In this document: piece by piece, positions 1,632 through 59,980 of the stretch
Layout: each line of letters starts with the position of its first letter
Numbering within the stretch: position 1 is the stretch's first letter
Source of the DNA: Octopus sinensis
Lineage: Eukaryota
DNA: 64,000 nucleotides
Direction: 5' to 3'
Assembly: GCF_006345805.1 (NCBI RefSeq)
Contig: NC_043001.1
Location: 115,382,001 to 115,446,000 of the forward strand
Translations under genes and position numbers: made by a program
The notes under the pieces: generated by a model
Seen by the model: only the letters and a program-made list of their open reading frames with translations
Told to the model about the DNA's origin: nothing
Database searches by the model: none

Positions 1632-1681
<50 letters not shown>

Positions 1682-2187
1682 TCTCTCTCTCTCTCTCTCT
1701 CACACTCACCATCTGTATGTGTGTGTGCATATATATATACATATATATACAGGTCTATATTTTTAAATGTCTTACTTTGAAAAATTGCATTCGGTGGGAT
1801 TAGTAATATTTTTGGTAGAAATGACTGATTGTCCCTCTTAGCGTTTGGCATGTATGTATAATGCCGTCTGGCATGTATGTATAATGCCCTCTATATATAA
1901 ATTAATATGTTCAATAAGAAATAATTATTTTCGAAATTTTTCTCTCTTATGAGGTTTTTACGCTATCTACCTGACAATTTCTTGTTAAGTTTTCCTTATT
2001 AAGTAGTTGTCCTTAATTGCTAATTTTTATTCCGAAAAAACTTTTCCTCTCCCGAAATGCAATTCGTAAAAGTTTGCCATTTACCCGGATGTAATATATG
2101 TAAACTCACCCATGTGCTTCGTTGATGTTGATCAGTTAGCTGATCGGCTTAAGCGGGGCAGGGTCGTTGTTTATTTATAATACATTC

Positions 2188-2235
2188 AGGCCTGCTGATG
2201 ATTACGTAAGTATGAAATCACTGTGATACAGGTCT
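2188..2235 (+). ncRNA. Type I hammerhead ribozyme, copy 1 (predicted cleavage 2228/2229)
   Basis: aggcctg-CTGATGA-ttacgtaagtat-GAA-Atcactgtga-T-A|caggtct. Stem I aggcctg/caggtct is 7 bp with one G-U. Stem II is tac-gtaa-gta. Stem III is ATCAC-T-GTGAT. The site is AUA. Confidence 0.88.
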
Positions 2236-2666
2236 ATATTTTTAAATGCCTTACTTTGAAAAATTGCATTCGGTGGATTAGTAATATTTTTGGTAGAAAT
2301 GGACTGATTGTCCCTCTTAGCGTTTGGCATGTATGTATAATGTCTTCTGGCATGTATGTATAATGCCCTCTATATATAATTAATATGTTCAATAAGAAAT
2401 AATTATTTTCGAAATTTTTTCTCTTATGAGGTTTTTACGCTATCTATCCCCTGACAATTTTTTGTTAAGTTTTCCTTATTAAGTAGTTGTCCTTAATTGC
2501 TAAATTTTTATTCCGAAAAAACTTTTCCTCTCCCGAAATGCATTCGTAAAAGTTTGCCATTTACCCGGATGTAATATATGTAAACTCACCCATGTGCTTC
2601 GTTGATGTTGATCAGTTAGCTGATCGGCTTAAGCGGGGCAGGGTCGTTGTTTATTTATAATACCTC

Positions 2667-2714
2667 AGGCCTGCTGATGATTACGTAAGTATGAAATCAC
2701 TGTGATACAGGTCT
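2667..2714 (+). ncRNA. Type I hammerhead ribozyme, copy 2 (predicted cleavage 2707/2708)
   Basis: Motif identical to copy 1. Confidence 0.88.
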
Positions 2715-3135
2715 ATATTTTTAATGCCTTACTTTGAAAAATGCATTCGGTGGGATTAGTAATATTTTTGGTAGAAATGACTGATTTCCTCTTAGCGTTT
2801 GGCATGTATGTATAATGTCTTCTGGCATGTATGTATAATGCCCTCTATATATAATTCTATGTTCAATAAGAAATAATTATTTTCGAAATTTTTTCTCTTA
2901 TGAGGTTTTTACGCTATCTACCTGACAATTTTTTGTTAAGTTTCCTTATTAAGTAGTTGTCCTTATTGCTAAATTTTTATTCCGAAAAAAATTTTCCTCT
3001 CCCGAATGCAATTCGTAAAAGTTTGCCATTTACCCGGATGTAATATATGTAAACTCACCCATGTGCTTCGTTGATGTTGATCAGTTAGCTGATCGGCTAA
3101 GCGGGGCCGGGTCGTTGTTTATTTATAATACATTC

Positions 3136-3183
3136 AGGCCTGCTGATGATTACGTAAGTATGAAATCACTGTGATACAGGTCT
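3136..3183 (+). ncRNA. Type I hammerhead ribozyme, copy 3 (predicted cleavage 3176/3177)
   Basis: Motif identical to copy 1. Confidence 0.88.
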
Positions 3184-3607
3184 ATATTTTTAAATGTCTT
3201 ACTTTGAAAAATTGCATTCGGTGGGATTAGTAATATTTTTGGTAGAAATGACTGATGTCCCTCTTGCGTTTGGCATGTATGTATAATGTCTTCTGGCATG
3301 TATGTATAATGCCCTCTATATATAAATTAATATGTTCAATAAGAAAATTATTTTCGAAATTTTTTCTCTTATGAGGTTTTTACGCTATCTACCTGACAAT
3401 TTCTTGTAAGTTTTCTTATTAAGTAGTTGTCCTTAATTGCTAAATTTTTATTCCGAAAAAACTTTTCCTCTCCCGAAATGCAATTCGTAAAAGTTTGCCA
3501 TTTACCCGGATGTAATATATGTAAACACCCATGTGCTTCGTTGATGTTGATCAGTTAGCTGATCGGCTTAAGCGGGGCAGGGTCGTTGTTTATTATATAA
3601 TACATTC

Positions 3608-3654
3608 AGGCCTGCTGATGATTACGTAGTATGAAATCACTGTGATACAGGTCT
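3608..3654 (+). ncRNA. Type I hammerhead ribozyme, copy 4 (predicted cleavage 3647/3648)
   Basis: Same motif with a 1-nt deletion in the stem II loop (ttacgtagtat). Confidence 0.85.
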
Positions 3655-3805
3655 ATATTTTTAAATGTCTTACTTTGAAAAATTGTATTCGGTGGGATTA
3701 GTAATATTTTTGGTAGAAATGACTGATTGTCCCTCTTAGCGTTGGGCATGTATGTATAATGTCTTCTGGCATGTATGTATAATGCCCTCTATATATAAAT
3801 TTATT

Positions 3806-3870
<65 letters not shown>

Positions 3871-3943
3871 TATATACATGGCCGCAATCCAATGACTGAA
3901 ACAATTAAAAATATAGATATATATATATATATGTTATATATAT

Positions 3944-13838: not shown

Positions 13839-13899
13839 CACACACACACACACACATATATATATACATATACATACATATACGTATATATACTATATC

Positions 13900-13931
<32 letters not shown>

Positions 13932-13995
13932 TAAATATATATATACACACACACACACACAGACACATATATATATATATGTATACATATATATA

Positions 13996-14035
<40 letters not shown>

Positions 14036-14057
14036 TATACATATATATGTATGTATA

Positions 14058-14093
<36 letters not shown>

Positions 14094-14289
14094 TGTATGT
14101 ATGTATGTATGTATAAGAGACTTTGTGTCAACTAGCATTAACTTGGATCATCTGTGGTCTTTGCACTTTCTCTTCGGTTTGTTAAGATCAATAAAACATA
14201 AAATGTGTGTGTGTGTGTGCGCGCGCGCTGCGTGCATAATTTTATTTTGGAAACAGATTAATACAAACCTCTAAGTTGAGAGTCTTGTG

Positions 14290-15725
14290 TGTAAGGGCTT
14301 TCGTTATCTTCAGCTTTTCAAACGCACGTGGTAATCCGTATAATAGTAATTGTATTAGGTAACAGTTGTGACTATTTTCGCTTTAATTTCACAAGGAAAA
14401 TCTTTATAAAGTATTTTCATTTGCTTTTCGTAATAGCTCATTTTCTTTCTTTCTATTTTTTTTAAGGTATGTTTTGAATTTCTCATTGGTTCAAATATTT
14501 AAATGCTCACTCCATGAAGCATTCCTGCCAGATGGATCCCTGATTTGTTGTTTGTGTACTATGATTCGATCCATTAATTTTCTTTTCTGTTTCGTCGATA
14601 GAATTCTCAATGTACTGTAAAAATGTAAGATCTTTTGCTTTGCAATTCATATTTGCACTCGCCTTAAATTCTTTCACATTCTGGAACTATTTCATCCTTA
14701 CCCTGTTCAATCAAATCTCACGTTCTACAACGAAGTCCTTCACATTTTCTTACCCGCATTATTTCTTCCTCTGGTGTGAATTTCATCTTTGTTAACAAAT
14801 CCTCTTTGTAGTTTTCTTCGCCTGTTAATAATTTGTGACTCTTTAACGATTCCCTTCTCCTCCCCTTAGATGTAATGACCGATGTAGAACTGAAAGGCAT
14901 TGTTTGACCGAATGGAAGATGTTATTTCTGAGACTGTGATGAATGACTACAGATGGAATATTTTTGTGTGTGTTTTCCACTTTATTTCTGAGAGTGTCTT
15001 CGTAAATCAGACTGGTATTTATTTTTCCTAGATTAGTAACTATTATGTTTTTAGCAATATTTTGTCTCTAGAGAAATATTTTTACTTCTTTCTGTTGTCT
15101 GTCTCGTCTAGTTTGTAACTATTGATTATTTACACCTTGTCATACATAATGTGATATTTCTTTTAGTATGGGATGGACGGTAAGATCTAAAGTCTAAATA
15201 TTGATGTGCATTCACACTCTTGCAGCAAGGATCAGTTGTTTTAGTCTCGTTTTTCTTAATTAAAATGATTTCCAGAGAAGAAAAAATTTTTTCATTCACT
15301 TCCATAGTAAATCGGATTGATCTTTTAGTCTGTTGATTAAGTTATAAAATCTGTTAAGGTCTTCTTTGTATCGGGTCTAAAATAAGAAACAACCATCCAG
15401 CAATCTTTTCCAGTTTTCTTTTGAAAGGGGTTAGAAACGCTGATCAGAAATAATTCAAGTTCGAAGATAGTTTTTTTTCCCCTCCTAGTGTTGCAAAAGT
15501 GGTTACAATTCTTGTACCCATGGTCCTCCCTTCTATTTGTTGGTGTTAATAATCAAACATGAAGTATTTGTTTTCTAGCACGAACCGTAATCCTTCTAGT
15601 ATGAATTACTTTGAGATTTTCTTATGAATTATAGATGGGCATTCGTCTGTGCGGAATTCAACGGCCTCCACTCCTAATCCACAGGGAAGGTTTGTGTGAA
15701 GGAAAGTCATGGCCAAAATAACCAT
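14290..15725 (-). mobile_element. Degraded Penelope-like retroelement (RT + GIY-YIG region)
   Basis: Minus-strand frames give FLHTNLPCGLGVEAV, FILEGLRFVLENKYF, GRTMGTRIVTTFATL, WKRLLDGCF (decayed YxDD), TDPCCKSVNAHQYLDFRSYRPSHTKRNI and RIIVHKQQIRDP. There are many stops. A CTGAAGA-taac-GAAA relic lies at about 14300-14315. Confidence 0.8.
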
Positions 15726-16289
15726 GACCATCATGATATGTATGTATGTATGTATGTATGTTCGTGGTGTGTATATGTATATATATATATATAATATATA
15801 TATATATATATTATATATATATATATATACACACATCTCATATTATATACTGAGGATAACCATAAGGTGGTCGGAACCATGCGATCTGGTGGGCTCGGGA
15901 CTCGGAGCTAAAATAGTAGGGGGTTCTCTCCCTGCTTACAATACATATCGAGTGCAGAGTGCACTGAATAATCAAACAAAAAAGCGTCCTTCTGGGGTTA
16001 AAACAGCAGTATCCCAGGGAACATCCGTGTTTAGCTAGCGTTAAACGCTACTCCTCAGTATAAATACTGTTTTCATCTCTTAAAGAGATTTTCCTAAATA
16101 GGTAATTTGCATATTATGTAAAGATAGTTAATATATATATATATATATATAATATATATATATATATATACGTGTGCGTGTGTGTACATGTAGATATATG
16201 TGTCAGTGTGTATGTATGCGTATATGTGTATATGTTCATGCTATATATATACATACATACATACATGCATACATACATACATACATACA

Positions 16290-16321
<32 letters not shown>

Positions 16322-16322
16322 C

Positions 16323-16389
<67 letters not shown>

Positions 16390-16399
16390 TATATATATA

Positions 16400-16702
16400 A
16401 GTTTATGAAAGAATGGAGTTGAACGACTTGTTAACAAGTTTCCTCTATTTTCGACATATGTTTCGAAGGCTGCATATTCCTAATTCCGAAGGAATAAGGA
16501 GTACATTACGCAGATTTCTCATCAGGAAAGGCAAGGAACTTATGTCGACATCAAAATGCACAAAAAACTTTTACCTGACTGCTCTCAAGGAGCCCATGCC
16601 CTAGGGACGTAACTTCAACCGTGTTCTTTCCGATGTGAATTTGCTACCCAGGTATCGGTTATCTTTCGAATTATCCTTAATACGATAATTCATTCAACTA
16701 CT

Positions 16703-17278: not shown

Positions 17279-17720
17279 TTACAAAACTTCTTTGTAGACG
17301 ATACTTTCTGTTTGGTCGACACTAATTTTCAAATTACTGGAGTCCGTTGCTCTACTCATAGCGACGTATAACTGGCTGTGTGTAAACATCGGAGTGGGTA
17401 AAAATATACCTGCACGATCTAAAGTTTGGCCCTGTGTTTTGTTTACTGTAAATGTGCGAGCGGAATCTTTAGGATTGCAAAGAGTCAAGCTAAGACTTAA
17501 CCTTACCTCTCACTGTTCTATGCGAATAATGTCTAAATGTTCTGGTACCGTGGGTTATTTTGATTGACAAAGCTGAGATGTAAACAACAGCCACTTCGAT
17601 TAGGTGTGCTGGAGTGCAGTCATGATGGCATACACTGAAGAGAGACATTCCTGCTGCTCGGCATTCTAGAGGTTCGAATAAACGCAAGTTCAAGCCGTGA
17701 ATTTTTAACAATGGTGGCAT
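17279..17720 (-). pseudogene. Helitron PIF1-like helicase C-terminal fragment (frameshifted)
   Basis: FTVNKTQGQTLDRAGIFLPTPMFTHSQLYVAMSRAT...IVYKEVL matches the SF1/PIF1 terminal motifs of Helitron RepHel. Confidence 0.88.
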
Positions 17721-31640: not shown

Positions 31641-31740
31641 NNNNNNNNNNNNNNNNNNNNNNNNNNNNNNNNNNNNNNNNNNNNNNNNNNNNNNNNNNNN
31701 NNNNNNNNNNNNNNNNNNNNNNNNNNNNNNNNNNNNNNNN
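31641..31740. other. Assembly gap (100 N)
   Basis: Run of exactly 100 N, typical of a scaffolding placeholder. Confidence 0.99.
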
Positions 31741-34506: not shown

Positions 34507-35315
34507 GATGGCAGAAACGTTAGCACGCCGGGCGAGATGCTTAGCAGTATTTCGTCTGCCGCTACGTTCTGAGTTCAAATTCCGTCGAGGTCGACTTTGC
34601 TTTTCATCCTCTCGGAGTCGATTAAATAAGTACCAGTTACGCACTGGGGTCGATGTAATCGACTTAATACCTATGTCTGTCCTTGTTTGTCCCCTCTGTG
34701 TTTAGCCCCTTGTGGGTAATAAAGAAATAGGTATTTCGTCTGCCGCTACGTTCTGAGTTCAAATTCCGTCGAGGTCGACTTTGCTTTTCATCCTCTCGGA
34801 GTCGATTAAATAAGTACCAGTTACGCACTGGGGTCGATGTAATCGACTTAATCCGTTTGTCTGTCCTTGTTTGTCCTCTCTGTGTTTGACCCCTTGTGGG
34901 TAGTAAAGAAATAGGTATTTCATCTGCCGCTACGTTCTGAGTTCAAATTCCGCCGAGATCGACTTTTCCTTTCATCCTTCGGGGTCGATAAATTAAGTAC
35001 CAGTTATGCACTGGGGTCGATGTAATCGACTTAATTCCTTTGTCTGTCCTTGTTTGTCCCCTCTTTGTTTAGCCCCTTGTGGACAATAAAGAAATAAATA
35101 AGGCGGCAAGTTTGCAGAATCATAAGCACGCCGGGCAAAATACTTAGCGTCATTTCGATCAGCATTACGTTCTGAGTTCAAATTCCACCAAGGCGAACTT
35201 TGCCTTTCATCACATCGGGGTCGACAAAATAAGAACCTGTTGAACACTGGAGTCGATGTAATTGGCTTATCCCCTCCCACAAAGTTGCTGGCCTTGTACA
35301 AAAATCTGAAGCCAA
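34507..35315 (+). mobile_element. Concatemer of third-family SINE: one headed unit, two ~183 bp headless repeats, then a related SINE
   Basis: Units restart at gtatttc(g/a)tctgccgctacgttctgag after aaagaaatag (junctions at about 34730 and 34913). Confidence 0.85.
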
Positions 35316-46900: not shown

Positions 46901-46947
<47 letters not shown>

Positions 46948-46950
<3 letters not shown>

Positions 46951-47680
46951 ACCTCCAATCACCCAAAGCACACAAAGACTAATATCCCCTCCAACCTAGC
47001 GAGAAGAATCTGCACTATTGTCTCAAATGACACAACACGAAATAAGAACTAAGGGCAATTCTTCTCGAAAGACATTACCCATCATTACTAGTGGACAACG
47101 GAATAGAACGGGCCAAATCAATTAACACTCAAGACTTACGAAAACCAAAACACATCCACAGTACAGTAAATAGCCTCCCCTATCTCTCAACACACAATCC
47201 AAGAAATGCAGAAGCTTACACTATTATATACAACAACATCCCACAGCTAAATCAAGACCCACGCCTAAAAAAATTACTCACAGCTCATAAAATAATAAAA
47301 AGTAAGAAACAACCTAAATCCCTAAAAAACCTACTCACCAACGCAAAATTACACAATACAAACCCACTACCCACAGTCAAAAAATGTGGTCGTTCCAACT
47401 GCAGGACTTGCATCCACCTCATTGAGGGATCAACGTACAAGTTCCAGTCGGGACACACCTTTATCATAAAAAATAATTTCACCTGCGCATCAAAAAATTT
47501 ACTTTATGTCATAAGGTGTGAAGGGTGCCACGAAGACTACATAGGGCAAACGGGCCTTACCCTCAGAGAAAGGATGCCAGTTCACCGCCAACAACTGAGG
47601 GACCCCACCACAAGACAGATACCACTTAGTGGACACTTAGGCGTCTGTGCACGCAATAAGCCCCCCAAATTCTTAGTTTG
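46948..47680 (+). mobile_element. Penelope-like retroelement fragment: RT thumb, linker and GIY-YIG endonuclease
   Basis: SNHPKHTKTNIPSNLARRIC...KKCGRSNCRTC...FTCASKNLLYVIRCEGCHEDYIGQTGLTLRERMPVH. It begins directly after a (TA)n run. Confidence 0.92.
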
Positions 47681-47783
47681 GTACTCTTTATATAGAAATT
47701 CGGGATTGTATTTATTTGGCAAGTAATTTCATCTGAGACTGTGTGTTGAACCTAAAGCAATTACTGCGTGGAAGACACATTCT

Positions 47784-48174
47784 TATTTCTTTATTACCCA
47801 CAAGGTGCTAAACATAGAGGGGACAAACAAAGACAGACAAAAGGATTAAGTCGATTACATCGACCCCAGCGCGTAACTGGTACTTAATTTATCGACTTCG
47901 GAAGGATGAAAGGCAAAGTCGACCTTTGCAGAATTTGAACTCAGAACGTAAAGCCAGGCGAAATACCTATTTCTTTACTACCCACAAGGGGCTAAAAACA
48001 CAGAGGGGACAAACAAGGACAGACAAACGGATTAAGTCGATTACATCGACCCTAGCGCGTAACTGGTACTTATTTTATCGACCCCGAAAGATGAAAGGCA
48101 AAGTTGACCTCGACGGAATTTGAACTCAGAACGTTACACTAAGCATTTCTGCCATCTCGCCGCCTTTAGAATGA
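47784..48174 (-). mobile_element. Dimeric third-family SINE flanked by a single 14-bp TSD
   Basis: The TSD ggaagacacattct is at 47770-47783 and 48175-48188. The internal junction is aaagaaatag|gtatttcg. Confidence 0.85.
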
Positions 48175-48214
48175 GGAAGACACATTCTAGCCATTGTAAA
48201 ATACATCTATCTTC

Positions 48215-48735
48215 TATCTCCTGCCCTTAACCTTCCAACGCGGAGTATAGGTCACTTATAGTTGAATTCCATGTCGCATAATTTTTTTATTTCTGTACTT
48301 ATACTCTGCCACTTATACTCTAGTTCCTTCTGCGTTGATCTACGCCACGAGTTCTTAGGCCTACCTCTCTTTCTATATCCATCCGGATTCCACTGTAAAG
48401 CACTTTTCGCTACATTTGGTGTGTCTTTTCTAATTGTGCTACCAATCCACTTCTACTTTTTCTTAAATATTTTCTCCCTAATCGAAATTTGATTTGTTCT
48501 TTGCCATAGCTCCATATTGCTTATGTGTTCGGGCCATCTAATTTTAAGTATACTACGCAAGCATCTGTAAAACACATAGGAACTGTTAACTTTCCTTAAT
48601 TACTTATTACTTGGTATCAAAATTTTCGTGGCACTATCTACGGCTTTGTTACTGACACAGTCTCTGACCACTTGCAGTCCTACTGTAACTGATCTGGAGA
48701 CCTGTATAAAGTAGCTAACTGTGGACCAGGTTGCA
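48215..48735 (-). mobile_element. RTE-clade LINE 3' fragment
   Basis: RCLRSILKIRWPEHISNMELW...WIGSTIRK...ALQWNPDGYRKRGRPKNSWRR. Confidence 0.85.
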
Positions 48736-48739
48736 GATA

Positions 48740-48801
<62 letters not shown>

Positions 48802-50924
48802 GTATTAGGAAGTTGAAAGTTATGACCGGTCATAGAGTCACCATTGGCTTCACACCTATAAAGCGCTTAGCTGCACAGGCGACTCGTCAGACTTAAATGG
48901 TTGAAGACGCATAACCTCTCTAGAAACTGGATGAAGAAATGCATAACGGTCAACTGGTTTTGTAAACAAAAAATAATTGTCCGTGATGCGGGCACAATAT
49001 TGTTATCCTCCTTACATCGGCTCCGGCCATGATGATATTCGAAGGGCTGTGACAGAACTATTCAATGAATGGGGATTTCCAAGTTTTGAATGGGGACATT
49101 GACTGAATAAGTCATTCCTGAAGTTTAAAAATGTCCCCCGATTCGAGCGAGGTTTTAGTATTCTTGCCCTCTCAGGGGCTTATACAGACGGGAGCAAGTA
49201 ATGTAGGCTTTGCTCGGCTGAGAATGCAAGAATCCTAAAAAACTCGCTCAACCCGGGGATCTTTTTAAACTTTGGTTTTAGGTGGGGGGGGTGTTATGCT
49301 TTTAAATATATTCGCTGATACCAACTTAATGTCGGATAAATCAATTAAAGTTGATGTTTCTGAATTTTTTCATTTCTTTAAAACGCGCATAGTCGAAAAA
49401 GACGTAACTCAAAACGACATAAGTCGAGTTATAACTGTATTTCATTGTCCCAGACGCGCAATACACTGACTCTGCCAATGTCAACGACCACTCCTTCTAT
49501 CGAAGATTCATGGTCCACATTGCAAGTGAATATTCCTGCATGATAAAAGGTTACAGTATCGTAAGGGGTACCCATTTCTCCGTATCATTATCTTCGCTGT
49601 GAAGAGAGAACGTTCCAGCAAGAAAGGCAACTGATCCACACTCTCGGTTCCTTCTCTCAGTAGGAGTGGACAGTTGGAGATCATAATAACCGTCAGAAAC
49701 TGAAACCACCGAAAAGCTGAACACTACAGTTGTTTGTTTGTTTTGTGTGTGTATGAGTTTATGTATACATGCGCGCACGCGTCTGTGTGCGCGTGTGTTT
49801 ATATGTGCGTGTGTACGTGTTTTGTTTATGTGTGTGCGTGTACGTGTGTGTGTGTGTGTGTGTACGTGTGTGTGTGCGTGTGCGAATGTGTTTGTACTCC
49901 CCAAGCATATGCTCTTCCTGGATTCATTCACAACACTGCTTCCACCACCGACAAGGAGCCCTGTCGATTCCTACTTTAGAGTGATGTTCGAACAAGAACT
50001 TCTTTGCCCCCCACTCACATGATGAGGGCGCAGAAGCGAAAGGAAAGGGAGAAAAGAGGGGAGGAGAAGGCGAAGGTGACTTGAGATAATTGATACTGAT
50101 TTCTTTATACATAATAACACAAAGATAATCAATTGCGGGAAATTAAGAGAGAGTATATTGATTAAATCAAAGGTTATTGTGTGGAAGATTTTATCGACCA
50201 TCGGATCACCGGTTTGGGAATTACGTTGGAGGGTTCAACATCCTTAGAGGTGTAATGTACAATAAATCAAAAATTTATACGTAACGCATCAAAATAATCA
50301 ATGTAATGATTCTGCAACAAATAATAAATTCTTTCTGTCAGCTGTACGAACTTCAAGGGAAATAATTCTGGAACAAAGGATGAGAGTTATTTCCCTTGGA
50401 CGTGCAGGCGAGCATTATTCAAACTAAAAATGTACATCCGATCCATTACCAGCACACAGCTTGCGCTCGCACACACTGTTGTATTCGCACACACCGATGT
50501 ATTCGTACACCCATACTCGCGCGCCTACTCACACCAAGATAATCTGAGTTACTAAGAATTTATAAGATTAAATTTATCTTTTCTAACAAACATATACCTG
50601 TAATAACATACATATGAACACACATTTATATACTATCTTGCATATATCTCTTTCCTCTATTTGCAAAAGTATAATATATGTACGTATGTATGTATGTATT
50701 TATGCGTGTATGTATCTCCTCTTTCTCTTTTTAATTTAGTATATATTTTGACCAGCGACCTACTTGGTAGCAAATTTGTGAAAGAAAACATCTTGTTTTA
50801 ACCGTCATCGTTTAAATCTTAAGAAGGTACTGCAGTTCGGATATTGTAATCATTTGTAGTATATGAATTAAGGATTTGCGTTCTCTCCTCAAGATATCAA
50901 GTTCAGCCATACTTTTCTCCAGAC

Positions 50925-52810: not shown

Positions 52811-52838
52811 GTCTGTATGTATGCATGTATGTATGTAT

Positions 52839-55800
52839 GATCTCTGTCGGTACTCCTCTTTGATCTCTGACGGCATTCCTCTTTGATTTCTGTCGGTACT
52901 CATCTTTGATCTCTGTCGGCATTCTTCTTTGATCTTTGTCGGTACTCCTCCTTGATCTCTGTCGGTACTCCACTTTGAACTCTGTCGGCATTCCTCTTTG
53001 ATCTCGGAGGGCATTCCTCTTTGATCTCTGTAGGTACACCTCTTTGATCACTGTCGATACTCCTCTTTGATCTCTGACAACATTCCTCTTTGATATCTGT
53101 CGGTACTCCTCTTTGATCTCTGTCGGCATTCCTCTTTGATCTCTGTCGGTACTTCTCTTTGATCTCTGACGGCATTCCTCTTTTATCTATGTCGGTAATT
53201 CCCTTTGATCTCTGACGGTATTCCTCTTTTATCACTGCCGGTACTCTTCTTTGATCTCTTTAATCTCTGTCGGTACTCTCCTTTGATCTCTACCGGCATT
53301 CCTCTTTGATCTCTGTCGGCATTCTCTTTGATCCCTGGCGGTATTCCTCTTTGATCTCTGTCGGCACTCCTCTTTGATCTCTGTCGGCATTCCTGTTTGA
53401 TCTCAGTCAGTACTGCTCTTTGATCTCTGTCGGTACTCCTCTTTGATCTCTGTCGGTACTCCTCTTTGATCTCTGTCGGTAATCCTCTTTGATCTCTGTC
53501 GGTATTCCTCTTGGATCTCTGTCGTACTCTCCTTTGATCTCTGTCGGCATTCCTCTTTGATCTGTCGGTACTCCTCTTTGATCTCTGACGGCATTCCTCT
53601 TTGATCCCTTTCGGTACTCCCCTTTGATCTCTGTCGGCATTCCTCTTTGATCTCAGTCGGTACCCCTCTTTGATCTCTGACGGCATTCCTCTTTCATCTC
53701 TGTCGGTACTCCTCTTTGATCTCTGTCGGTACTCCTCTTTGATCTCTGTCGGTATTCCTCTTTGATCTCAGTCGGTACCCCTTTTTGATCTCTTACGGCA
53801 TTCCTCTTTGATCTCTGTCGATATCCTCTTTGATCTCTGACGGTATTCCTCTTTGATCTCTGTCGGTACTCCTCTTTGATCTCTGTCGGTACATCTCTTT
53901 GATCACTGTCGGTACTCCCCTTTGATCTCTAACGACATTCCTCTTTGATCTCTGTCGGCATTCCTCTTTGATCTCTGTCGGTACTCCTCTTTGATCTCTG
54001 TCGGTACTCTTCTTTGATCTCTGTCGGTACTCCTCTTTGATCTCTGTCGGTATTCCTCTTTGATCTCTGATTGTACTCCCCTTTGATCTCTGTCGGCATT
54101 CCTCTTTGATCTCTGTCGGTACTCCTCCGTGATCCCTTTCGGTACTCACTTTTGATCTCTGACGACATTCCTCTTTGATCTCAGTCGGTACCCCTCTTTG
54201 ATCTCTGACGGCATTCCTCTTTGATCTCTGTCGGTACTCCTCTTTGATCTCTGACGGTATTCCTCTTTCATCTCTGTCGGTACTCCTCTTTGATCTCTGT
54301 CGGTACACCTCTTTGATCTATGTCGGTAATTCCCTTTGATCTCTGACGGCATTCCACTTTGATCACTGCCGGTATTATTCTTTGATCTCTGACGGCACTC
54401 CTCTTTGATCTCTGTCGGCACTCTGTCAGAATTCCTGTCGGTACTCCTCTTTGATCTCTCGGCATTCTCTTTGATCTATGTCAGTCTTCCCCTTTGATCT
54501 CTGTTGGCATTCCTCTTTGATCTCAGTCGGTACTCCTATTTGATCTCAGTCGGAATTCTTCCTTGTTCTCTGTCGGTACACCCCTTTGATCTCTGTCGGT
54601 ACTCCTCTTTGATCTCTGTCGGAACTCTTCCTTTGATCTGTCGGCATTCCTCTTTGATCTCTGACGACATTCCTCTTTGAGCTCTGTTGGTACTCCTATT
54701 TGATCTCTGACGGCATTCCACTTTGATCTCTGTCGGTACTCCACTTTGATCTCTATCGGTATTCCTCTTTGATCTCTGTCGGTACTCCCCTTTGAACTCT
54801 GTCGGCATTCTCTTTGATCTCTGTCGGTACTCCTCTTTGATCTCTGACGACATTCCTCTTTGATCTCTGTCAGTACTCCACTTTGATCTCTATCGGTATT
54901 CGTCTTTGATCTCTGTCGGTACTCCCCTTTGAACTCTGTCGGCATTCCTCTTTGATCTCTGTCGGTACTCTTCTTTGATCTCTGACGGCATTCCTTCTTG
55001 ATCTCTGTCAGTACTCATCTTTGATCTCTGTCAGCATTCCTCTTTGATCTCTGTCGGTACTCCTAATTGATCTCTGTTCGCATTCTCTTTGATATATATC
55101 GGTACCATCTTTGATCTCTGACGGCATTCCTCTTTGATCTCTGTCGGTACTCCCCTTTGATCTCTGTCGGCATTCCTCTTTGATCCCTTTCGGCACCCTC
55201 TTTGATCTCTTTCGGGACTCCTCTTTGATCACTTTCGGGACTCCTCTTTGATCTCTTTCGGGACTCCTCTTTGATCACTTTCGGGACTCCTCTTTGATCT
55301 CTTTCGGGACTCCTCTTTGATCTCTTTCGGGACTCCTCTTTGATCTCTTTCGGGACTTCTCTTTGATCTCTTTCGGGACCCCTCTTTGAACACTTTCGGA
55401 ACTCCTCTTTGATCTCTTTCGGGTCTCCTCTTTGATCTCTTTCGGGACTCGTCTTTCATCCCTTTCGGGACTCCTCTTTTATCACTTTCGGGACTCCTCT
55501 TTGATCACTTTCGGGACTCCTCTTTGATCTCTTTCGGGACTCCTCTTTCATCTCTTTCGAGACTCCTCTTTCATCTCTTTCGAGACTCCTCTTTCATCTC
55601 TTTCGGGATCCTCTTTGATTTCTTTCGGCACAGTCTTTGATCACTTTCGGGACTCCTCTTTCATCTCTTTCGAGACTCCTCTTTCGTCTCTTTCGGCACC
55701 ATCTTTGATCTCTTTCGGGACTCCTCTTTCATCTCTTTCGAGACTCCTCTTTCGTTTCTTTCGGCACCCTCTTTGATCTCTTTCGGGACTCCTCTTTCGT

Positions 55801-56074
55801 CTCTTTCGGCACCCTCTTTGATCTCTTTCGGGACTCCTCTTTCATCTCTTTCGAGACTCCTCTTTCGTCTCTTTCGGCACCATCTTTGATCTCTTTCGGG
55901 ACTCCTCTTTGATCTCTTTCGAGATTCCTCTTTGTTCTCTTTCGGGACTCCTCTTTGATCTCTTTCGGGACTCCTCTTTGATCTCTATCGATACTGCTCT
56001 TTGATCTCTTTCGGCACACTCTTTGATCTCTTTCGGGACCTTTTTTTATCTCTTTCGGCACAATCTTTGATCTC
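52839..56074. repeat. 23-bp minisatellite, ~3.2 kb (~140 units), with two variant domains
   Basis: The unit tcctctttgatctctgtcggtac (variants ggcat, gacgg) runs to about 55185, then tcctctttgatctctttcgggac. Confidence 0.95.
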
Positions 56075-56237: not shown

Positions 56238-59200
56238 GGTTGGTTGGCATCCTTTCTGTCTCGGGAGACAATGGAGTTGCGCATTAAGTAGTCTAGTCAG
56301 GCTTTTACATTTCATGTCCTGATACATTTCCTGCTGTGGCTGTGTCGTCCTATCCTGGACAAACACTCCCTCTGGCAGGTACCGCAAATGTAGCGAAGAC
56401 TGTTCCTGGCTGGTTGTAGTGCCATAGTCTCTTGTTTACGTTTCTTCCTTTCTTTCCATTTCTCCTCTCTCTCTCTCTGTCACTCTTTTGTATTCCCTCT
56501 CTTACGGTACGTCGCCATTCTCCACGGTTGCAGGCACCTGCCTCCCAACCGCTAATACTGATGTTGCAGGCCTTCATGTTTCTTTTGCAAACATCCTTGT
56601 AACGTCAGATCGGTCTACCCACAGACCTAGTACCCCTGGCAAGCTCTCCGTAGAGTATGTCCGTGGGGATTCTGCCATCTTTCATACGGCTAACATGCCC
56701 AAGCCATCTCATACATCTTTGTGTGAGGAGTGCAAACATGCTTGGTATTCCTGTTTGCCTGAGGACATCTTTGTTGGGGATATGAATCTGCCATTTGATG
56801 CGGAGGATTTTTCGAAGGCAGCGCAGGTGAAAGATGTTTAGGCGACACTCTTGGCGTGTGTATAGCGTCCAGGTCTCACTTCCATACAGTAGAGTGTTGA
56901 GTACACATGCCTGGTAGATCTTCATTTTCGTGGTCTTGGTCAGCTTATTGTTGTCCCAAGCCCGTTTGGAGAGTTGGGCCATCGCAGCAGCTGCCTTGCC
57001 AATGCGTATATCCTCAGCAGCTTTGGTGGACATCCGATTTTTTGGAGCAGGATGAAGAGGCCTGTTCTGCTTACCGAGTCAAAAGCCTTTTTTAGATCAA
57101 TGAAGGCCATATATAATGGCATTTTCTGCTCTCTGGACTTCTCCTGAAGTTGGCGTATGGAGAATATCATATCGATAGTTGATCTGCTTCTTCTAAAGCC
57201 ACACTGCGATTCCGGATAGATTCGAGAAGCAAGTAGTTGTAGCCTGACCAGGATAACGCGGGCAAAGGTCTTTCCAACAGTGCTTAGAAGGGATATACCA
57301 TGGTAATTGTTACAATCACCACGGTCACCTTTGTTTTTGTAAAGCGTAATGATGTTAGCATCCCGCATATCCTGAGGGACTGTACCCTCTTCCCTGCACT
57401 GACACAGAAGCTCATGAAGGTGCCGAAGCAGGATGGTGTTTTTGCCGGCTTTGATGATCTCTGAGGGGATGCCGTCTTTTCCCGGAGCATTATTTCTTGC
57501 TAGGGAGTCAACAGCCTTGGTGAGCTCTGCTATAGATGGCGGACTGTCAAGTTCGCACATAACTGGCAAGATCATAACACTCTCGATTGCAGCCTCAGCT
57601 ACCGTAGTCTCCTGTGAGTAGAGATCCTGGTAGTGCTCCACCCATCTATCCATTTGCTTGCCTTGATCCCTGATGAGATATCCAGTAGTTGATTTCAGAG
57701 GGGCTGACTTGGTTGCGGATGGACCGAGGGCCTTCTTCAAACCGGCATACATCCCACGGGTGTCACCCCTGTCAGCACCTGACTGGATACTCTGATAGAT
57801 TTCCTGCCAATACCTATTTGCACAGCGTCTGGCTGTCAGTTGGGTTTTATTTCGTGTCTTTCTGAGTACTTCGAGTGACTTTGTAGAAGAGTCACTCTTG
57901 TATTGCATCAGAGCTGCACGCTTTGCTTCGATAACTGGCTCCAGCTCTGAGAGCCCAGCATTGAACCAATCTGGGCTTTGCCTTTCTCTCATGCCGAAAG
58001 TATCTATTAATGTCGTATACAAGTCTTCCCTGATATAGTCCCACCTACTTTCAGCAGAGGAGGTTGGGCAGCTGCTGAGGGCAACCTTGATAGAAGCAGC
58101 AAAACATTTTCGCAGTGTAGGGTCCGAAGTTCTGGCGGTGTTGATGCGTGGTCGGCCCACTTTCTTGGAGCGATGGACTTTTTAGGGCAGAATCCTCACC
58201 CTACTTCTAATTAGTGAGTGGTCTGTGTCACAATCCGCGCTGTGGTAGCTGCGGGTCAATAGAGTAGAATTCAGAAAGGATCTCCGTGTAATAATGAGAT
58301 CTAGCTGATGCCAGTGGTGAGATCTTGGATGTCTCCAGGATGCCTTGTGGGATGGCTTGTTGCTAAAGAATGTGTTTGTGATGCACAGGTTGTGGTATGT
58401 GCAGAATTCGAGTAGTCTCTGACCATTGTCATTCATGTTGCCAATACCAAAGTGTCCAACACAAATGGGCCACAAAACATGGTCAGATCCACGCGAGCGT
58501 TAAAATCCCCTAGAAGGTAGATATTTTCAGTCGTTGGTATATTTTCTATGACACAGTTGAGATCTTTGTAGAACTGGTCCTTGGTCTCCTATGAGCTGTA
58601 GAGAGTGGGAGCATAGAGGCTGAGTAGATGTACTGAGCCAGAAGAAGTCGAGAGGCGCAGTGAGAGGATACGCTCAGTGCCTCCTGATGGTGGTTCTATT
58701 GAGGAGAGTAGTTAGTTTCTCACTGCAAAGCCAACGCCATGTTGACGAGGTTCTTCTGGATCGCTTCCCTGCCAAAAGAAGGTGAAATCCTGCTCTTTGA
58801 GTTTGCCGTTTGAGGGAAGTCTTGTCTCCTGCAGCCCAGCAATATCTATGTTGAGCCTCTTTAGTTCACGGTCAATGATGGCCGTTTTCCTTGTGTCTTC
58901 AATCCTGAGAAGATCATCAGATATTCCAGGACACATGGTCCTGACATTCCAGCTTGCCAACCGCAGAACTGGTGTTTTCCTGACTTTTAGTTGCTTGCCT
59001 GGTGCAGAGGTTGCAGGCCGCTTTTCGAGACATACTCTTAGCTCCAAGCACCCAATGGAGCAGGCGGCCCGTGACGGGTCAGCACCTTATTAACTGGGGG
59101 TTGCCCAGCTTGATGTGGGTAGTAGCTAACCAATAGGACACGGAGGTCCCTCCCACCGTCAGAGGTAACCCGTCGCGCCCATATTATACGCCAATCTGAA

Positions 59201-59608
59201 TGGACTTATCACTCGTGACTGTTACCTCCCGTGTTGTTTCTGCAGCTTTTTACAGCTGCACTGAAGTGTCCTCTCCAGTTTTGCGCAGGCCTGGGCTATA
59301 GATAAGAAAGTCCTGGGTAGCCCAATCGTCAGGTTTCCTCTCTCGACCTTGCTGATGTAGTCCAGTGGAGTGCAGTGCATTACGTTTGGCACCAGCTTGG
59401 TTGCAGGAGCTGCCGGAAGAGTGTCGAGTCGAACACTAGACCGCCTTCAGGGCTCCACTCCGGATTTCTTTGAAGGTTGTCTCCTTTCCGTAACCCTGGA
59501 TAGGGGCCCATACCGGGTACTGTCAGCCGGAGCCAGCTGAGCCCGTAACTCGTGTCAGGCAGGGTCGTCACTCCCCGAAGTAGTGAAGAAGTTCGCTACC
59601 CACTACCT
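56238..59608 (-). mobile_element. RTE (BovB-like) LINE with 5' UTR, APE and RT domains, an internal RT deletion and a (TAA)n tail at 56075-56237
   Basis: APE: LASWNVRTM..DIAGLQETRL..HGVGFAV..FSNKPSHKASWRHPRSHHWHQLD. RT: NAPGKDGIP..LYKNKGDRGDCNNYHGISLL..FIDLKKAFDSV. The 3' end is ttgtctcccgagacagaaaggatgccaaccaacc. Confidence 0.93.
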
Positions 59609-59636
59609 TTTATTATTATTACTATTATTATTATTG

Positions 59637-59676
<40 letters not shown>

Positions 59677-59744
59677 CATTATTATTATTATTATTATTAT
59701 TATTGTTATTATTATAATTATCATCAACATCATCATTATTAAGA

Positions 59745-59925
59745 TGAGGAGCTGCTGGAATTGTTAGTAGGCTGGACGAAGTGCTGAGCTGCAACTGCAT
59801 TTCACCCATCACTACCTTCTGAATTCAAATTCTTGTTCGGATGAGATGAGTATCTGCGGAGCATTGGGGTTGATGTGATCTAATTGCCCCTCGGCACATT
59901 TACAGGCCTTGTGCCTAGAGTAAAA
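59745..59925 (+). mobile_element. Diverged SINE remnant between (ATT)n runs
   Basis: Contains ggagctgctggaattgttag, ttctgaattcaaattc, and cattggggttgatgtgatc. Confidence 0.55.
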
Positions 59926-59938
59926 ATTATTATTATTA

Positions 59939-59980
<42 letters not shown>

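What the first reader, a model, noticed from the sequence alone, without database searches (positions are those of the whole stretch)
1750..3801. Tandem hammerhead-ribozyme array: candidate cephalopod retrozyme / circRNA replicon
Seen: what looks like a plain 475-bp satellite carries, once per unit, aggcctg-CTGATGA-ttacgtaagtat-GAAA-tcactgtga-TA|caggtct. This folds by hand into a complete type I hammerhead: 7-bp stem I, invariant CUGANGA and GAAA core, short stem II, ATCAC-T-GTGAT stem III and an AUA triplet. The motif is intact in all four junctions apart from a 1-nt loop deletion in copy 4, while the rest of the unit collects indels. The unit has no ORF. Established: metazoan non-LTR retrozymes (newt satellite 2, schistosome SMalpha, cnidarian, bivalve and axolotl families) are tandem short repeats with one type I hammerhead per unit. 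Their transcripts self-cleave to monomers that circularise, and they are thought to be mobilised by Penelope-like elements. A stem III with an impossibly small loop is the hallmark of dimeric cleavage between adjacent units. Inference: this is such a system in a probable octopus genome, predicting a 470-480 nt linear or circular RNA. I do not recall a cephalopod description but could not check the literature.
Basis: partly seen in the sequence, partly recalled or inferred. Interest (0 to 1): 0.93.

Follow-up and report, generated by a model that had tools for sequence, protein, structure and literature searches.

The report
Octopus tandem repeat with hammerhead motif
A 4.3-copy, roughly 475-bp non-coding tandem repeat in an octopus genome carries one hammerhead-ribozyme-like motif per unit and looks like a retrozyme, a known kind of ribozyme-bearing mobile repeat not yet described in cephalopods, but self-cleavage and circular RNA are untested.

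Summary
Window 1747-3801 is a 4.3-copy tandem repeat with units of 469-479 bp, 33.5% GC and no ORF. Each junction carries a complete type I hammerhead core with 7-bp stem I, short stem II and quasi-palindromic helix III.

Chance is unlikely: about 0.0025 such motifs per Mb of random sequence. The array starts exactly at the predicted cleavage site and sits inside a (TA)n microsatellite. The hammerhead-strand RNA is unusually self-paired (z -4.8 to -6.4). Penelope-like element (PLE) fragments lie in the same window, also next to (TA)n. LINE and SINE matches place the window in an octopus.

Weak points: no Rfam hammerhead hit at gathering (best 13.9 bits against 52). The usually conserved G10.1-C11.1 pair is U.U, though two hammerheads in 3' UTRs of related PLEs show the same U/U flank. 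The hammerhead fold is not the monomer minimum-energy structure, whereas two copies fold as a double hammerhead. The "motif conserved while the rest decays" argument is not significant (P=0.095). No second copy was found anywhere I could search.

Verdict: a probable non-LTR retrozyme-type element, a new member of a known kind. Activity, circular RNA and genomic copy number are unproven. Interest is moderate.

The parts
1747..3801 (+). Tandem array of 4.3 units of 469-479 bp, 33.5% GC, non-coding
   Evidence: TRF period 471, 96% matches. Unit alignment. ORF and composition checks.
1750..2228 (+). Unit 1. It starts at C1.1 of the predicted cleavage site, directly after (TA)n.
   Evidence: Sequence ...CATATATATA|CAGGTCT. 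RNA fold z=-6.43.
2229..2707 (+). Unit 2, the predicted 479-nt monomer RNA from cleavage site to cleavage site
   Evidence: MFE -122 kcal/mol, z=-4.76. Minus strand z=-2.36.
2708..3176 (+). Unit 3 (469 nt)
3177..3647 (+). Unit 4 (471 nt)
   Evidence: z=-6.32.
3648..3796 (+). Partial unit 5. It ends inside the unit's own TATATATAAATT and runs into (TA)n.
2188..2235 (+). Hammerhead-like motif 1 (stem I 7 bp, CUGAUGA, U[UAC-GUAA-GUA]U, GAAA, AUCAC-U-GUGAU, A17|C1.1). Predicted cleavage between 2228 and 2229.
2667..2714 (+). Hammerhead-like motif 2. Predicted cleavage 2707|2708.
3136..3183 (+). Hammerhead-like motif 3. Predicted cleavage 3176|3177.
3608..3654 (+). Hammerhead-like motif 4, with loop II GUA instead of GUAA. 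Predicted cleavage 3647|3648.
1632..1749 (.). Left flank: (TC)n, then (TG)n/(TA)n microsatellite ending ...CATATATATA
3797..3876 (.). Right flank: (TA)n microsatellite
46951..47726 (+). 5'-truncated canonical Penelope-like element (RT C-terminus plus GIY-YIG endonuclease), flanked by (TA)n. It belongs to the candidate class of mobilising element and is not part of the array.
   Evidence: Pfam GIY-YIG 19.3 bits, below the 22.6-bit cut-off. Homologues at 69% identity that pass the GIY-YIG cut-off. tblastn. Sequence.

Best explanation
The array is a retrozyme-type element: a non-autonomous, non-coding retroelement related to Penelope-like elements (PLEs). It is a 4.3-mer DNA copy of a roughly 475-nt structured RNA that carries one type I hammerhead per unit.

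Proposed cycle:
1. The array is transcribed into oligomeric RNA (inferred).
2. Hammerheads of neighbouring units pair through the quasi-palindromic helix III (AUCAC-U-GUGAU) into a double hammerhead. They cleave after A17, at ...GUGAUA|CAGGUCU... (predicted from sequence and energies, not shown).
3. [quoted passage not shown]
4. A PLE reverse transcriptase/endonuclease nicks AT-rich or (TA)n DNA and starts reverse transcription inside the RNA, here at the unit's UAUAUAUAAAUU. It copies several units and runs off at the hammerhead-made 5' end.

Step 4 would give exactly the observed insertion: 5' end at C1.1, 3' end internal to a unit, and both ends in (TA)n. This is inferred from one insertion.
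For: **The motif**
- A complete hammerhead core and three helices occur once per unit in all four junctions.
- Chance expectation is 0.0025 per Mb, against four in 2 kb.

**Insertion anatomy**
- The left array boundary coincides with the predicted cleavage site to within the 3-nt ATA overlap. P is about 0.008 if boundaries are random, or about 0.07 if restricted to the 15 ATA sites of a unit.
- Both ends abut (TA)n. Only 5.8% of window positions lie within 15 nt of a (TA)>=5 run.
- The PLE fragment at 46951-48745 is likewise bracketed by (TA)n.
- PLE endonuclease preference for AT-rich DNA and internal initiation of reverse transcription are published (PMC11167929).

**RNA structure**
- The plus-strand unit RNA is strongly self-paired. 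z is -4.76, -6.43 and -6.32 for three units, and 62-68% of bases are paired. The minus strand gives -2.36, and 14 control segments give a mean of -0.85 and a minimum of -4.4.
- The monomer helix III is worth -0.2 kcal/mol, while the intermolecular helix III is worth -10.1. Two motifs fold spontaneously into the double hammerhead.

**PLE context**
- Canonical PLE fragments are in the window.
- Relatives of that PLE carry type I hammerheads just 3' of the endonuclease ORF. Two of them (L008, L011) have the same unusual U...U flank of stem II as this motif.

**Fit to the published definition**
- GC of 33.5%, no ORF and a tandem layout fit non-LTR retrozymes (PMC7229834, and the preprint 10.64898/2026.07.22.740005).
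Against: - There is no Rfam hammerhead hit at gathering or at E<=10 over 2.3 kb. In a 66-nt search the best is Hammerhead_HH9 at 13.9 bits, against a gathering score of 52.
- U.U replaces the highly conserved G10.1-C11.1 pair, and stem II has only 3 bp.
- The hammerhead fold (-8.3 kcal/mol) is not the monomer MFE (-10.3). The motif's own z-score is -0.9.
- The four copies are near-identical, so there is no covariation evidence. The low variation in the motif is not significant (P=0.095).
- Units of 469-479 bp exceed the published 150-450 bp range.
- No other copy was found in the window, in 83 kb of O. bimaculoides and O. sinensis loci, or in JGI, IMG/VR and GTDB pattern scans.
- One control genomic segment also reached z=-4.4.
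- The boundary argument rests on a single insertion.
Confidence: 0.62

Rival explanations
1. Dead relic. The array did arise from a hammerhead-bearing PLE or retrozyme RNA, but this hammerhead version (U.U at 10.1/11.1, 3-bp stem II) cleaves poorly or not at all. The locus is then a silent, one-off insertion that makes no circular RNA.
For: - U.U replaces G10.1-C11.1.
- The hammerhead fold is 2 kcal/mol above the MFE.
- The Rfam score is far below gathering.
- The inserted copy contains four uncleaved internal sites, which fits inefficient cleavage of the source RNA.
- No further copies were found.
- PLE minimal hammerheads show low activity in vitro (PMC4209133).
Against: - The 5' boundary at the cleavage site implies that this very sequence was cut at least once.
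- The units differ by only about 1-2% in substitutions, so the insertion is young.
- The same U/U flank occurs in hammerheads of two PLE relatives, which suggests a tolerated variant.
Confidence: 0.18
2. An ordinary minisatellite or satellite that contains a hammerhead-like string by chance. The repeat grew by unequal crossing-over or slippage, and no ribozyme or RNA intermediate is involved.
For:
- Rfam does not recognise the motif.
- There is no covariation.
- The motif's own folding z-score is unremarkable.
Against: - A chance motif would also have to fall in a long-period tandem repeat.
- That repeat would have to start at the motif's cleavage site (P 0.008-0.07).
- It would have to sit in a PLE-type (TA)n target.
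- It would have to carry strand-specific excess RNA structure.
- It would have to share the odd U/U stem II flank with PLE hammerheads.
Confidence: 0.1
3. A pseudo-LTR-only tandem of an autonomous PLE. The roughly 475-bp unit would be the pLTR or UTR of a specific octopus Penelope family amplified without its ORF, not an independent non-autonomous family.
For: - PLEs form partial tandems with a hammerhead in each pLTR (PMC4209133, PMC8557442).
- A 2026 preprint derives non-LTR retrozymes from pLTRs (10.64898/2026.07.22.740005).
- L011 shows two hammerheads 103 nt apart after a PLE ORF.
Against: - The unit has no sequence similarity to either PLE fragment in the window, or to the eight PLE-relative contigs, outside the hammerhead core.
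- There is no RT or EN remnant next to the array.
Confidence: 0.08
4. Assembly artefact: a collapsed, expanded or mis-polished long-read assembly of a simpler repeat.
For: Of the 40 variable columns, 27 are indels and 16 of those are homopolymer-type. A 100-N scaffold gap lies at 31641-31740.
Against: The units also differ by 13 substitution columns, and the flanks are unique and asymmetric. An artefact would alter copy number, not create the motif.
Confidence: 0.02

Closest known systems
Metazoan non-LTR retrozymes (Cervera & de la Pena 2020, PMC7229834), e.g. the Mytilus galloprovincialis 350-390-bp repeats
   Same: - Short AT-rich non-coding tandem units with one type I hammerhead each.
- Highly self-paired monomer RNA.
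- No LTR, PBS or PPT.
- PLEs present in the same genome.
- The mussel hammerheads also lack the archetypal loop 1-loop 2 contacts.
   Different: - Units of 469-479 bp, longer than the reported 150-450 bp repeats and 170-400-nt circles.
- U.U instead of G10.1-C11.1, and a 3-bp stem II.
- An 11-nt quasi-palindromic helix III.
- Only one locus seen, with no expression or cleavage data.
Newt satellite 2 and axolotl retrozymes (dimeric, 'double' hammerheads; Forster et al. 1988 as cited in PMC7761336)
   Same: Helix III is too weak for the monomer (-0.2 kcal/mol). Two tandem motifs are predicted to form an extended intermolecular helix III.
   Different: Helix III here is long (5+5 bp around a U.U) rather than 1-2 bp with a 2-4-nt palindromic loop. 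The host is an invertebrate, where most retrozyme hammerheads are reported to work as monomers.
Minimal type I hammerheads in pseudo-LTRs of Penelope-like elements (Cervera & de la Pena 2014, PMC4209133)
   Same: - Palindromic helix III.
- An extra or unpaired nucleotide at the 5' side of stem II.
- Association with AT-rich or (TA)n targets.
- The same U...U flank of stem II in the PLE relatives L008 and L011.
   Different: No RT/EN ORF is attached, and the unit is repeated 4.3 times head to tail. The PLE min-hammerheads are described as keeping G10.1-C11.1.
Schistosoma Sm-alpha repeats
   Same: A short interspersed or tandem non-coding repeat with an active type I hammerhead (as cited in PMC7229834 and PMC4209133).
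   Different: Sm-alpha has a canonical core with G10.1-C11.1 and loop-bulge tertiary contacts. It is also massively multicopy.

Membership tests
Hammerhead ribozyme, type I | Conserved core C3 U4 G5 A6 N7 G8 A9 / G12 A13 A14 / A15.1-U16.1 / H17 | tested here: met
   CUGAUGA ... GAAA ... U-A|C is present in all four copies. The Rfam HH9 alignment uses the same register.
Hammerhead ribozyme, type I | Three helices around the core, with helix I open | tested here: met
   Stem I is 7 bp, stem II is 3 bp plus a GUAA loop, and helix III is 4 bp plus CUG (or 10 bp in a dimer). Caveat: this fold, at -8.3 kcal/mol, is not the monomer MFE of -10.3.
Hammerhead ribozyme, type I | G10.1-C11.1 closing pair of stem II (highly conserved, PMC4209133) | tested here: not met
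   U.U sits at that position in all copies. The same U/U occurs in the PLE-linked motifs L008 and L011.
Hammerhead ribozyme, type I | Score at or above the Rfam gathering threshold (clan CL00010 models) | tested here: not met
   No hit at gathering or at E<=10 over 2.3 kb. Best is HH9 at 13.9 bits against 52. The hammerheads tested in the window (16447-16531) and in PLE relatives (L006, L008, L011) also fail (22.7 and 25.7 bits against 34, or no hit), so this test has low power.
Hammerhead ribozyme, type I | Compensatory base changes that support the helices | tested here: inconclusive
   The four copies are identical in all paired positions. No other family member was found.
Hammerhead ribozyme, type I | Site-specific self-cleavage | not testable with these tools
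   The only indirect hint is that the array's 5' end coincides with the predicted site.
Metazoan non-LTR retrozyme | Head-to-tail repeats of a short unit, each with a type I hammerhead (at least two consecutive complete motifs, criterion of 10.64898/2026.07.22.740005) | tested here: met
   There are 4.3 units and four complete motifs. The motif MFE of -10.3 is below the preprint's -5 kcal/mol cut-off.
Metazoan non-LTR retrozyme | Low GC (<45-50%), no ORF, no LTR/PBS/PPT | tested here: met
   GC is 33.1-33.6%. The longest open frame is 61 codons. There are no terminal repeats beyond the tandem units.
Metazoan non-LTR retrozyme | Unit or circle size about 150-450 bp (descriptive range, PMC7229834) | tested here: inconclusive
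   469-479 bp is just above the reported range. The range is descriptive, not defining.
Metazoan non-LTR retrozyme | Highly self-paired monomer RNA | tested here: met
   z is -4.76 to -6.43 and 62-68% of bases are paired. Controls have a mean of -0.85 and a minimum of -4.4.
Metazoan non-LTR retrozyme | Coexistence with autonomous PLEs | tested here: met
   PLE fragments lie at 46951-47726(+) and 15305-14413(-). Many young Penelope insertions are reported in O. vulgaris (PMC13282606).
Metazoan non-LTR retrozyme | Multiple genomic loci (a mobile family) | not testable with these tools
   No second copy in the window or in 83 kb of octopus loci. No cephalopod genome can be searched here.
Metazoan non-LTR retrozyme | Expression as unit-length linear and circular RNA | not testable with these tools
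   There is no transcriptome access. An ORF-based look-up in the protein collection found nothing.

The most novel reading that the evidence does not exclude
This is an active cephalopod retrozyme family whose hammerhead naturally carries U10.1.U11.1 and works only as a double hammerhead. It would produce the largest metazoan retrozyme circle so far, about 475 nt. Its insertions (5' end at the ribozyme cut, internal 3' start, (TA)n target) would be the first genomic footprints to show directly that PLE-type target-primed reverse transcription uses hammerhead-processed RNA.
Probability: 0.3. Interest if true: 0.6.

Novelty: new member of a known kind. Interest (0 to 1): 0.45.

Why it matters
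If confirmed, it would extend hammerhead retrozymes and their small circular RNAs to cephalopods. It would add a natural hammerhead variant without the G10.1-C11.1 pair.

It would also offer a clean insertion footprint that links ribozyme processing to Penelope-like reverse transcription. That footprint is a 5' end at the cut site, an internal 3' start and a (TA)n target. The link is currently only hypothesised (PMC7229834, 10.64898/2026.07.22.740005).

It would not open a new category. Retrozymes are already described from cnidarians to amphibians, including a bivalve, and Rfam hammerhead hits have been listed for a squid genome (PMC6962438).

Tried and rejected
**Rfam**
- Scans at gathering and at E<=10 gave no hammerhead for the array. 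Only a 66-nt search gave a weak HH9 alignment.
- Rfam also under-scores or misses the hammerheads tested in the window and in PLE relatives. I therefore gave this negative little weight.

**Looking for other copies**
- blastn of the unit against the window found only AT-rich noise.
- The 47-aa ORF across the motif found nothing among 5.8 billion proteins.
- Exact or gapped DNA patterns were run against JGI metagenomes, IMG/VR and GTDB genomes. The single hit, L013, is a chance match in a GC-rich bacterial coding region.
- blastn and a descriptor scan of 83 kb of O. bimaculoides and O. sinensis loci found nothing.

- 'Hammerhead conserved, the rest decays' is not significant.
- tRNA, Pol III-like and bacterial promoter scans were uninformative.
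- The unit is not similar to the PLE UTRs.

**A reading I dropped**
- I first took the GIY-YIG ORF at 47091-47726 for a Naiad-type PLE with an N-terminal endonuclease. Its homologues have the RT C-terminus upstream of the endonuclease, which is the canonical order.
Full report
**1. What is there**

Tandem Repeats Finder reports one long-period array at 1747-3801, with period 471, 4.3 copies, 96% matches and 2% indels. Cutting at the predicted ribozyme sites gives units of 479, 479, 469 and 471 nt plus a 149-nt partial unit.

The units are 33.1-33.6% GC. The longest stop-to-stop frame of a consensus trimer is 61 codons. The repeat is therefore non-coding.

Each unit junction carries AGGCCUG-CUGAUGA-U[UAC-GUAA-GUA]U-GAAA-UCAC-U-GUGA-UA|CAGGUCU, at 2188-2235, 2667-2714, 3136-3183 and 3608-3654. 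Copy 4 has lost one A of the GUAA loop.

**2. Is it more than chance?**

I wrote a type I hammerhead descriptor. It requires CUGANGA, a stem II, GAAA, a helix III that starts A15.1-U16.1, H17, and stem I.

- In the window it finds the four array motifs and one other motif, at 16525-16453 on the minus strand.
- In 400 random windows of the same trinucleotide statistics, none reached the array's quality of stem I >=7, stem II >=3 and helix III >=4.
- In 394 Mb of such sequence, one did. That is 0.0025 per Mb, or about 1e-6 per unit.

A 2.8-Gb genome would still hold a handful of chance strings, so the motif alone is not proof. The context has to carry weight.

**3. Context that fits an RNA-mediated, hammerhead-processed origin**

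*(a) Boundaries.* The array begins at CAGGTCT, the first base after the predicted cut, directly after ...CATATATATA. Only the 3-nt ATA is shared between flank and unit end.
- With random boundaries this has P of about 0.008.
- If junctions are restricted to the unit's 15 ATA sites, P is about 0.07.
- The other end lies inside a unit, in its own TATATATAAATT, and runs into (TA)n.
- Only 5.8% of window positions are within 15 nt of a (TA)>=5 run.

*(b) PLEs in the window.* The window contains canonical Penelope-like element (PLE) remains.
- ORF 47091-47726 has a GIY-YIG match.
- Its homologues are 45-69% identical and pass the Pfam GIY-YIG cut-off. In the two contigs whose upstream ORF gave a Pfam match (L005, L008) a reverse transcriptase, at sub-threshold RVT_1 scores, lies upstream of the endonuclease.
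- This fragment starts after (TA)n 46902-46948. Its 3' UTR ends at (TA)n 48746-48805.
- A second, degenerate fragment lies at 15305-14413 on the minus strand.
- Published work shows that a PLE endonuclease prefers AT-rich DNA and that its reverse transcriptase initiates inside the RNA template (PMC11167929). That matches an insertion whose 3' end is internal to a unit.

*(c) RNA structure.* The hammerhead-strand unit RNA is much more structured than its dinucleotide shuffles.
- z is -4.76, -6.43 and -6.32 for units 2, 1 and 4, with 62-68% of bases paired.
- The 5' CAGGUCU pairs with AGGCCUG and closes the whole monomer.
- The minus strand gives z=-2.36.
- Fourteen control segments of the window average -0.85, with one at -4.4. 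This is supportive, not decisive.

*(d) Host.* The host is an octopus.
- The LINE reverse transcriptase at 56943-58160 on the minus strand is 83-87% identical to O. bimaculoides proteins.
- The SINE that flanks the array recurs in O. bimaculoides and O. sinensis loci.

**4. The ribozyme itself: strengths and weaknesses**

*Strengths.* The core nucleotides and topology are right, and AUA|C obeys the NUH rule.

*Weaknesses.*
- The pair next to the core in stem II, G10.1-C11.1 in nearly all natural hammerheads (PMC4209133), is U.U here. Stem II has only three pairs.
- The hammerhead fold (-8.3 kcal/mol) is 2 kcal/mol above the monomer MFE. The motif's folding z-score is ordinary.
- Rfam finds no hammerhead at gathering or at E<=10 over 2.3 kb. 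A 66-nt search gives Hammerhead_HH9 at 13.9 bits against a gathering score of 52, in the same register as mine.

*Two results soften these objections.* First, Rfam also fails on the hammerheads I tested in the window and in PLE relatives.

| Motif | Rfam result |
|---|---|
| Window 16447-16531 (-) | Hammerhead_1, 22.7 bits (gathering 34) |
| L006 (PLE relative) | Hammerhead_1, 25.7 bits (gathering 34) |
| L008 and L011 (PLE relatives) | no hammerhead hit |

Second, the odd U...U flank of stem II recurs in two hammerheads located just 3' of the endonuclease ORF of relatives of the window's PLE:
- L008: CUGAAGA-U[UGUC-AGGA-GACA]U-GAAA-GCGC-UU|
- L011: CUGAUGA-U[G-AA-U]U-GAAA-CUAG-UU|, present twice, 103 nt apart

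The deviation therefore looks like a feature of a PLE-linked hammerhead lineage rather than random damage. This rests on two sequences from unidentified organisms.

**5. Monomer or dimer?**

A 4-bp stem with a CUG loop is possible, but it is worth only -0.2 kcal/mol. Two helix III segments pair intermolecularly at -10.1 kcal/mol. Two 48-nt motifs cofold into the double-hammerhead arrangement at -28.3 kcal/mol, against 2 x -10.3 for the monomer MFEs.

This is the architecture described for newt, axolotl and PLE hammerheads (PMC4209133, PMC7761336). The inserted copy retains four uncut internal sites and one cut 5' end. That fits partial cleavage of an oligomeric RNA. It also fits rolling reverse transcription of a circle that ends when the circle re-cleaves.

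**6. What did not hold**

The claim that the motif is protected while the rest decays is not significant. The motif has 1 variable column in 46 against 3.8 expected, P=0.095. Of the 40 variable columns, 27 are indels, 16 of them next to the same base (homopolymer-type), which suggests long-read sequencing error though that was not tested.

I found no other copy of the unit:
- in the window
- in 83 kb of octopus loci
- through an ORF look-up
- in pattern scans of JGI metagenomes, IMG/VR and GTDB genomes

At least one JGI metagenome contains octopod DNA (L009), but coverage is unknown. These negatives are therefore weak.

**7. Comparison with the literature**

The features match metazoan non-LTR retrozymes (PMC7229834, PMC7761336, 10.64898/2026.07.22.740005), apart from the slightly longer unit and the U.U variant.

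None of the papers I could search describes a cephalopod retrozyme. The giant squid genome paper lists 235 Rfam 'hammerhead 1' hits without analysing them (PMC6962438). Octopus genomes are reported to hold many Penelope insertions, including young ones (PMC13282606).

**8. Verdict**

This is most likely a retrozyme-type, PLE-dependent non-coding element, a new member of a known kind. Confidence is about 0.6 for that reading. About 0.2 more goes to an inactive relic of the same origin, and about 0.1 to a chance motif in an ordinary minisatellite.

Catalysis, circular RNA, transcription and family size are all untested. Interest is moderate at 0.45. It is a useful lead for cephalopod small circular RNAs and for the PLE-retrozyme link, but not a new category.

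Noticed in passing
window 16447-16531 (-): A second, more canonical type I hammerhead: CUGAUGAG, a 50-nt stem II hairpin, CGAAAC-AUAU-GUC|GAAAA. Helix III (ACAUAUGU) is palindromic and stem I is 4+4 bp with an internal loop. Rfam Hammerhead_1 gives 22.7 bits against a gathering score of 34, E=9e-4 in a 101-nt search. The motif ends about 55 nt before (TA)n 16131-16399, like the 3' end of a PLE.
   Followed up: partly
window 46951-48805 (+): A 5'-truncated canonical Penelope-like element (RT C-terminus plus GIY-YIG) bracketed by (TA)n tracts. Its 3' UTR is split by a SINE insertion with a GGAAGACACATTC duplication. No intact hammerhead core was seen in its UTR.
   Followed up: partly
window 14413-15305 (-): A second, degenerate PLE fragment, lying between (TA)n 16131-16399 and the (TA/CA)n tract at 13856-14115.
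   Followed up: no
L005 ~1712-1760; L010 ~1250-1300; L012 ~780-830; L009 ~1500-1550: PLE relatives from metagenome contigs carry a conserved hammerhead-like motif about 150-200 nt after the endonuclease ORF. The C3-G8 core pair is replaced by A3-U8 (AUGAAUA or AUGAUUA ... GAAACCGGU[U/C]|GGG) or by U3-A8 (UUGAAAA ... GAAACCGGUC|GGG). U3-A8 is published for Schistosoma Cercyon PLEs (PMC4209133). I did not check whether A3-U8 is published.
   Followed up: partly
L011 1097-1135 and ~1200-1238: Two identical minimal hammerheads lie 103 nt apart, downstream of a PLE endonuclease ORF. They form a miniature tandem, with U/U flanking a vestigial stem II.
   Followed up: no
L009 1648-1743 (JGI metagenome 3300045642): This metagenome contig carries the SINE that occurs at least 10 times in the window, at about 90% identity. 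The metagenome therefore contains octopod host DNA.
   Followed up: no
window 52838-56074: A very long 23-bp minisatellite of 141 copies at 81% matches, overlapped by spurious minus-strand ORFs.
   Followed up: no
window 34547-35096 and 47790-48170: SINE-like 184-bp units occur as a 3-copy tandem and again as an insertion in the PLE UTR. Related copies are scattered through the window.
   Followed up: no
window 56605-62570 (-): LINE remains with RVT_1 and zf-RVT matches. The best protein hits are in O. bimaculoides (83-87% identity), which I used to identify the host.
   Followed up: partly
window 31641-31740: A run of 100 N, which is a scaffold gap in the assembly.
   Followed up: no
window 17282-17488 (-): A fragment of a superfamily 1 helicase C-terminus with sub-threshold Pfam hits. 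It may be a Helitron or PIF1-like remnant.
   Followed up: no
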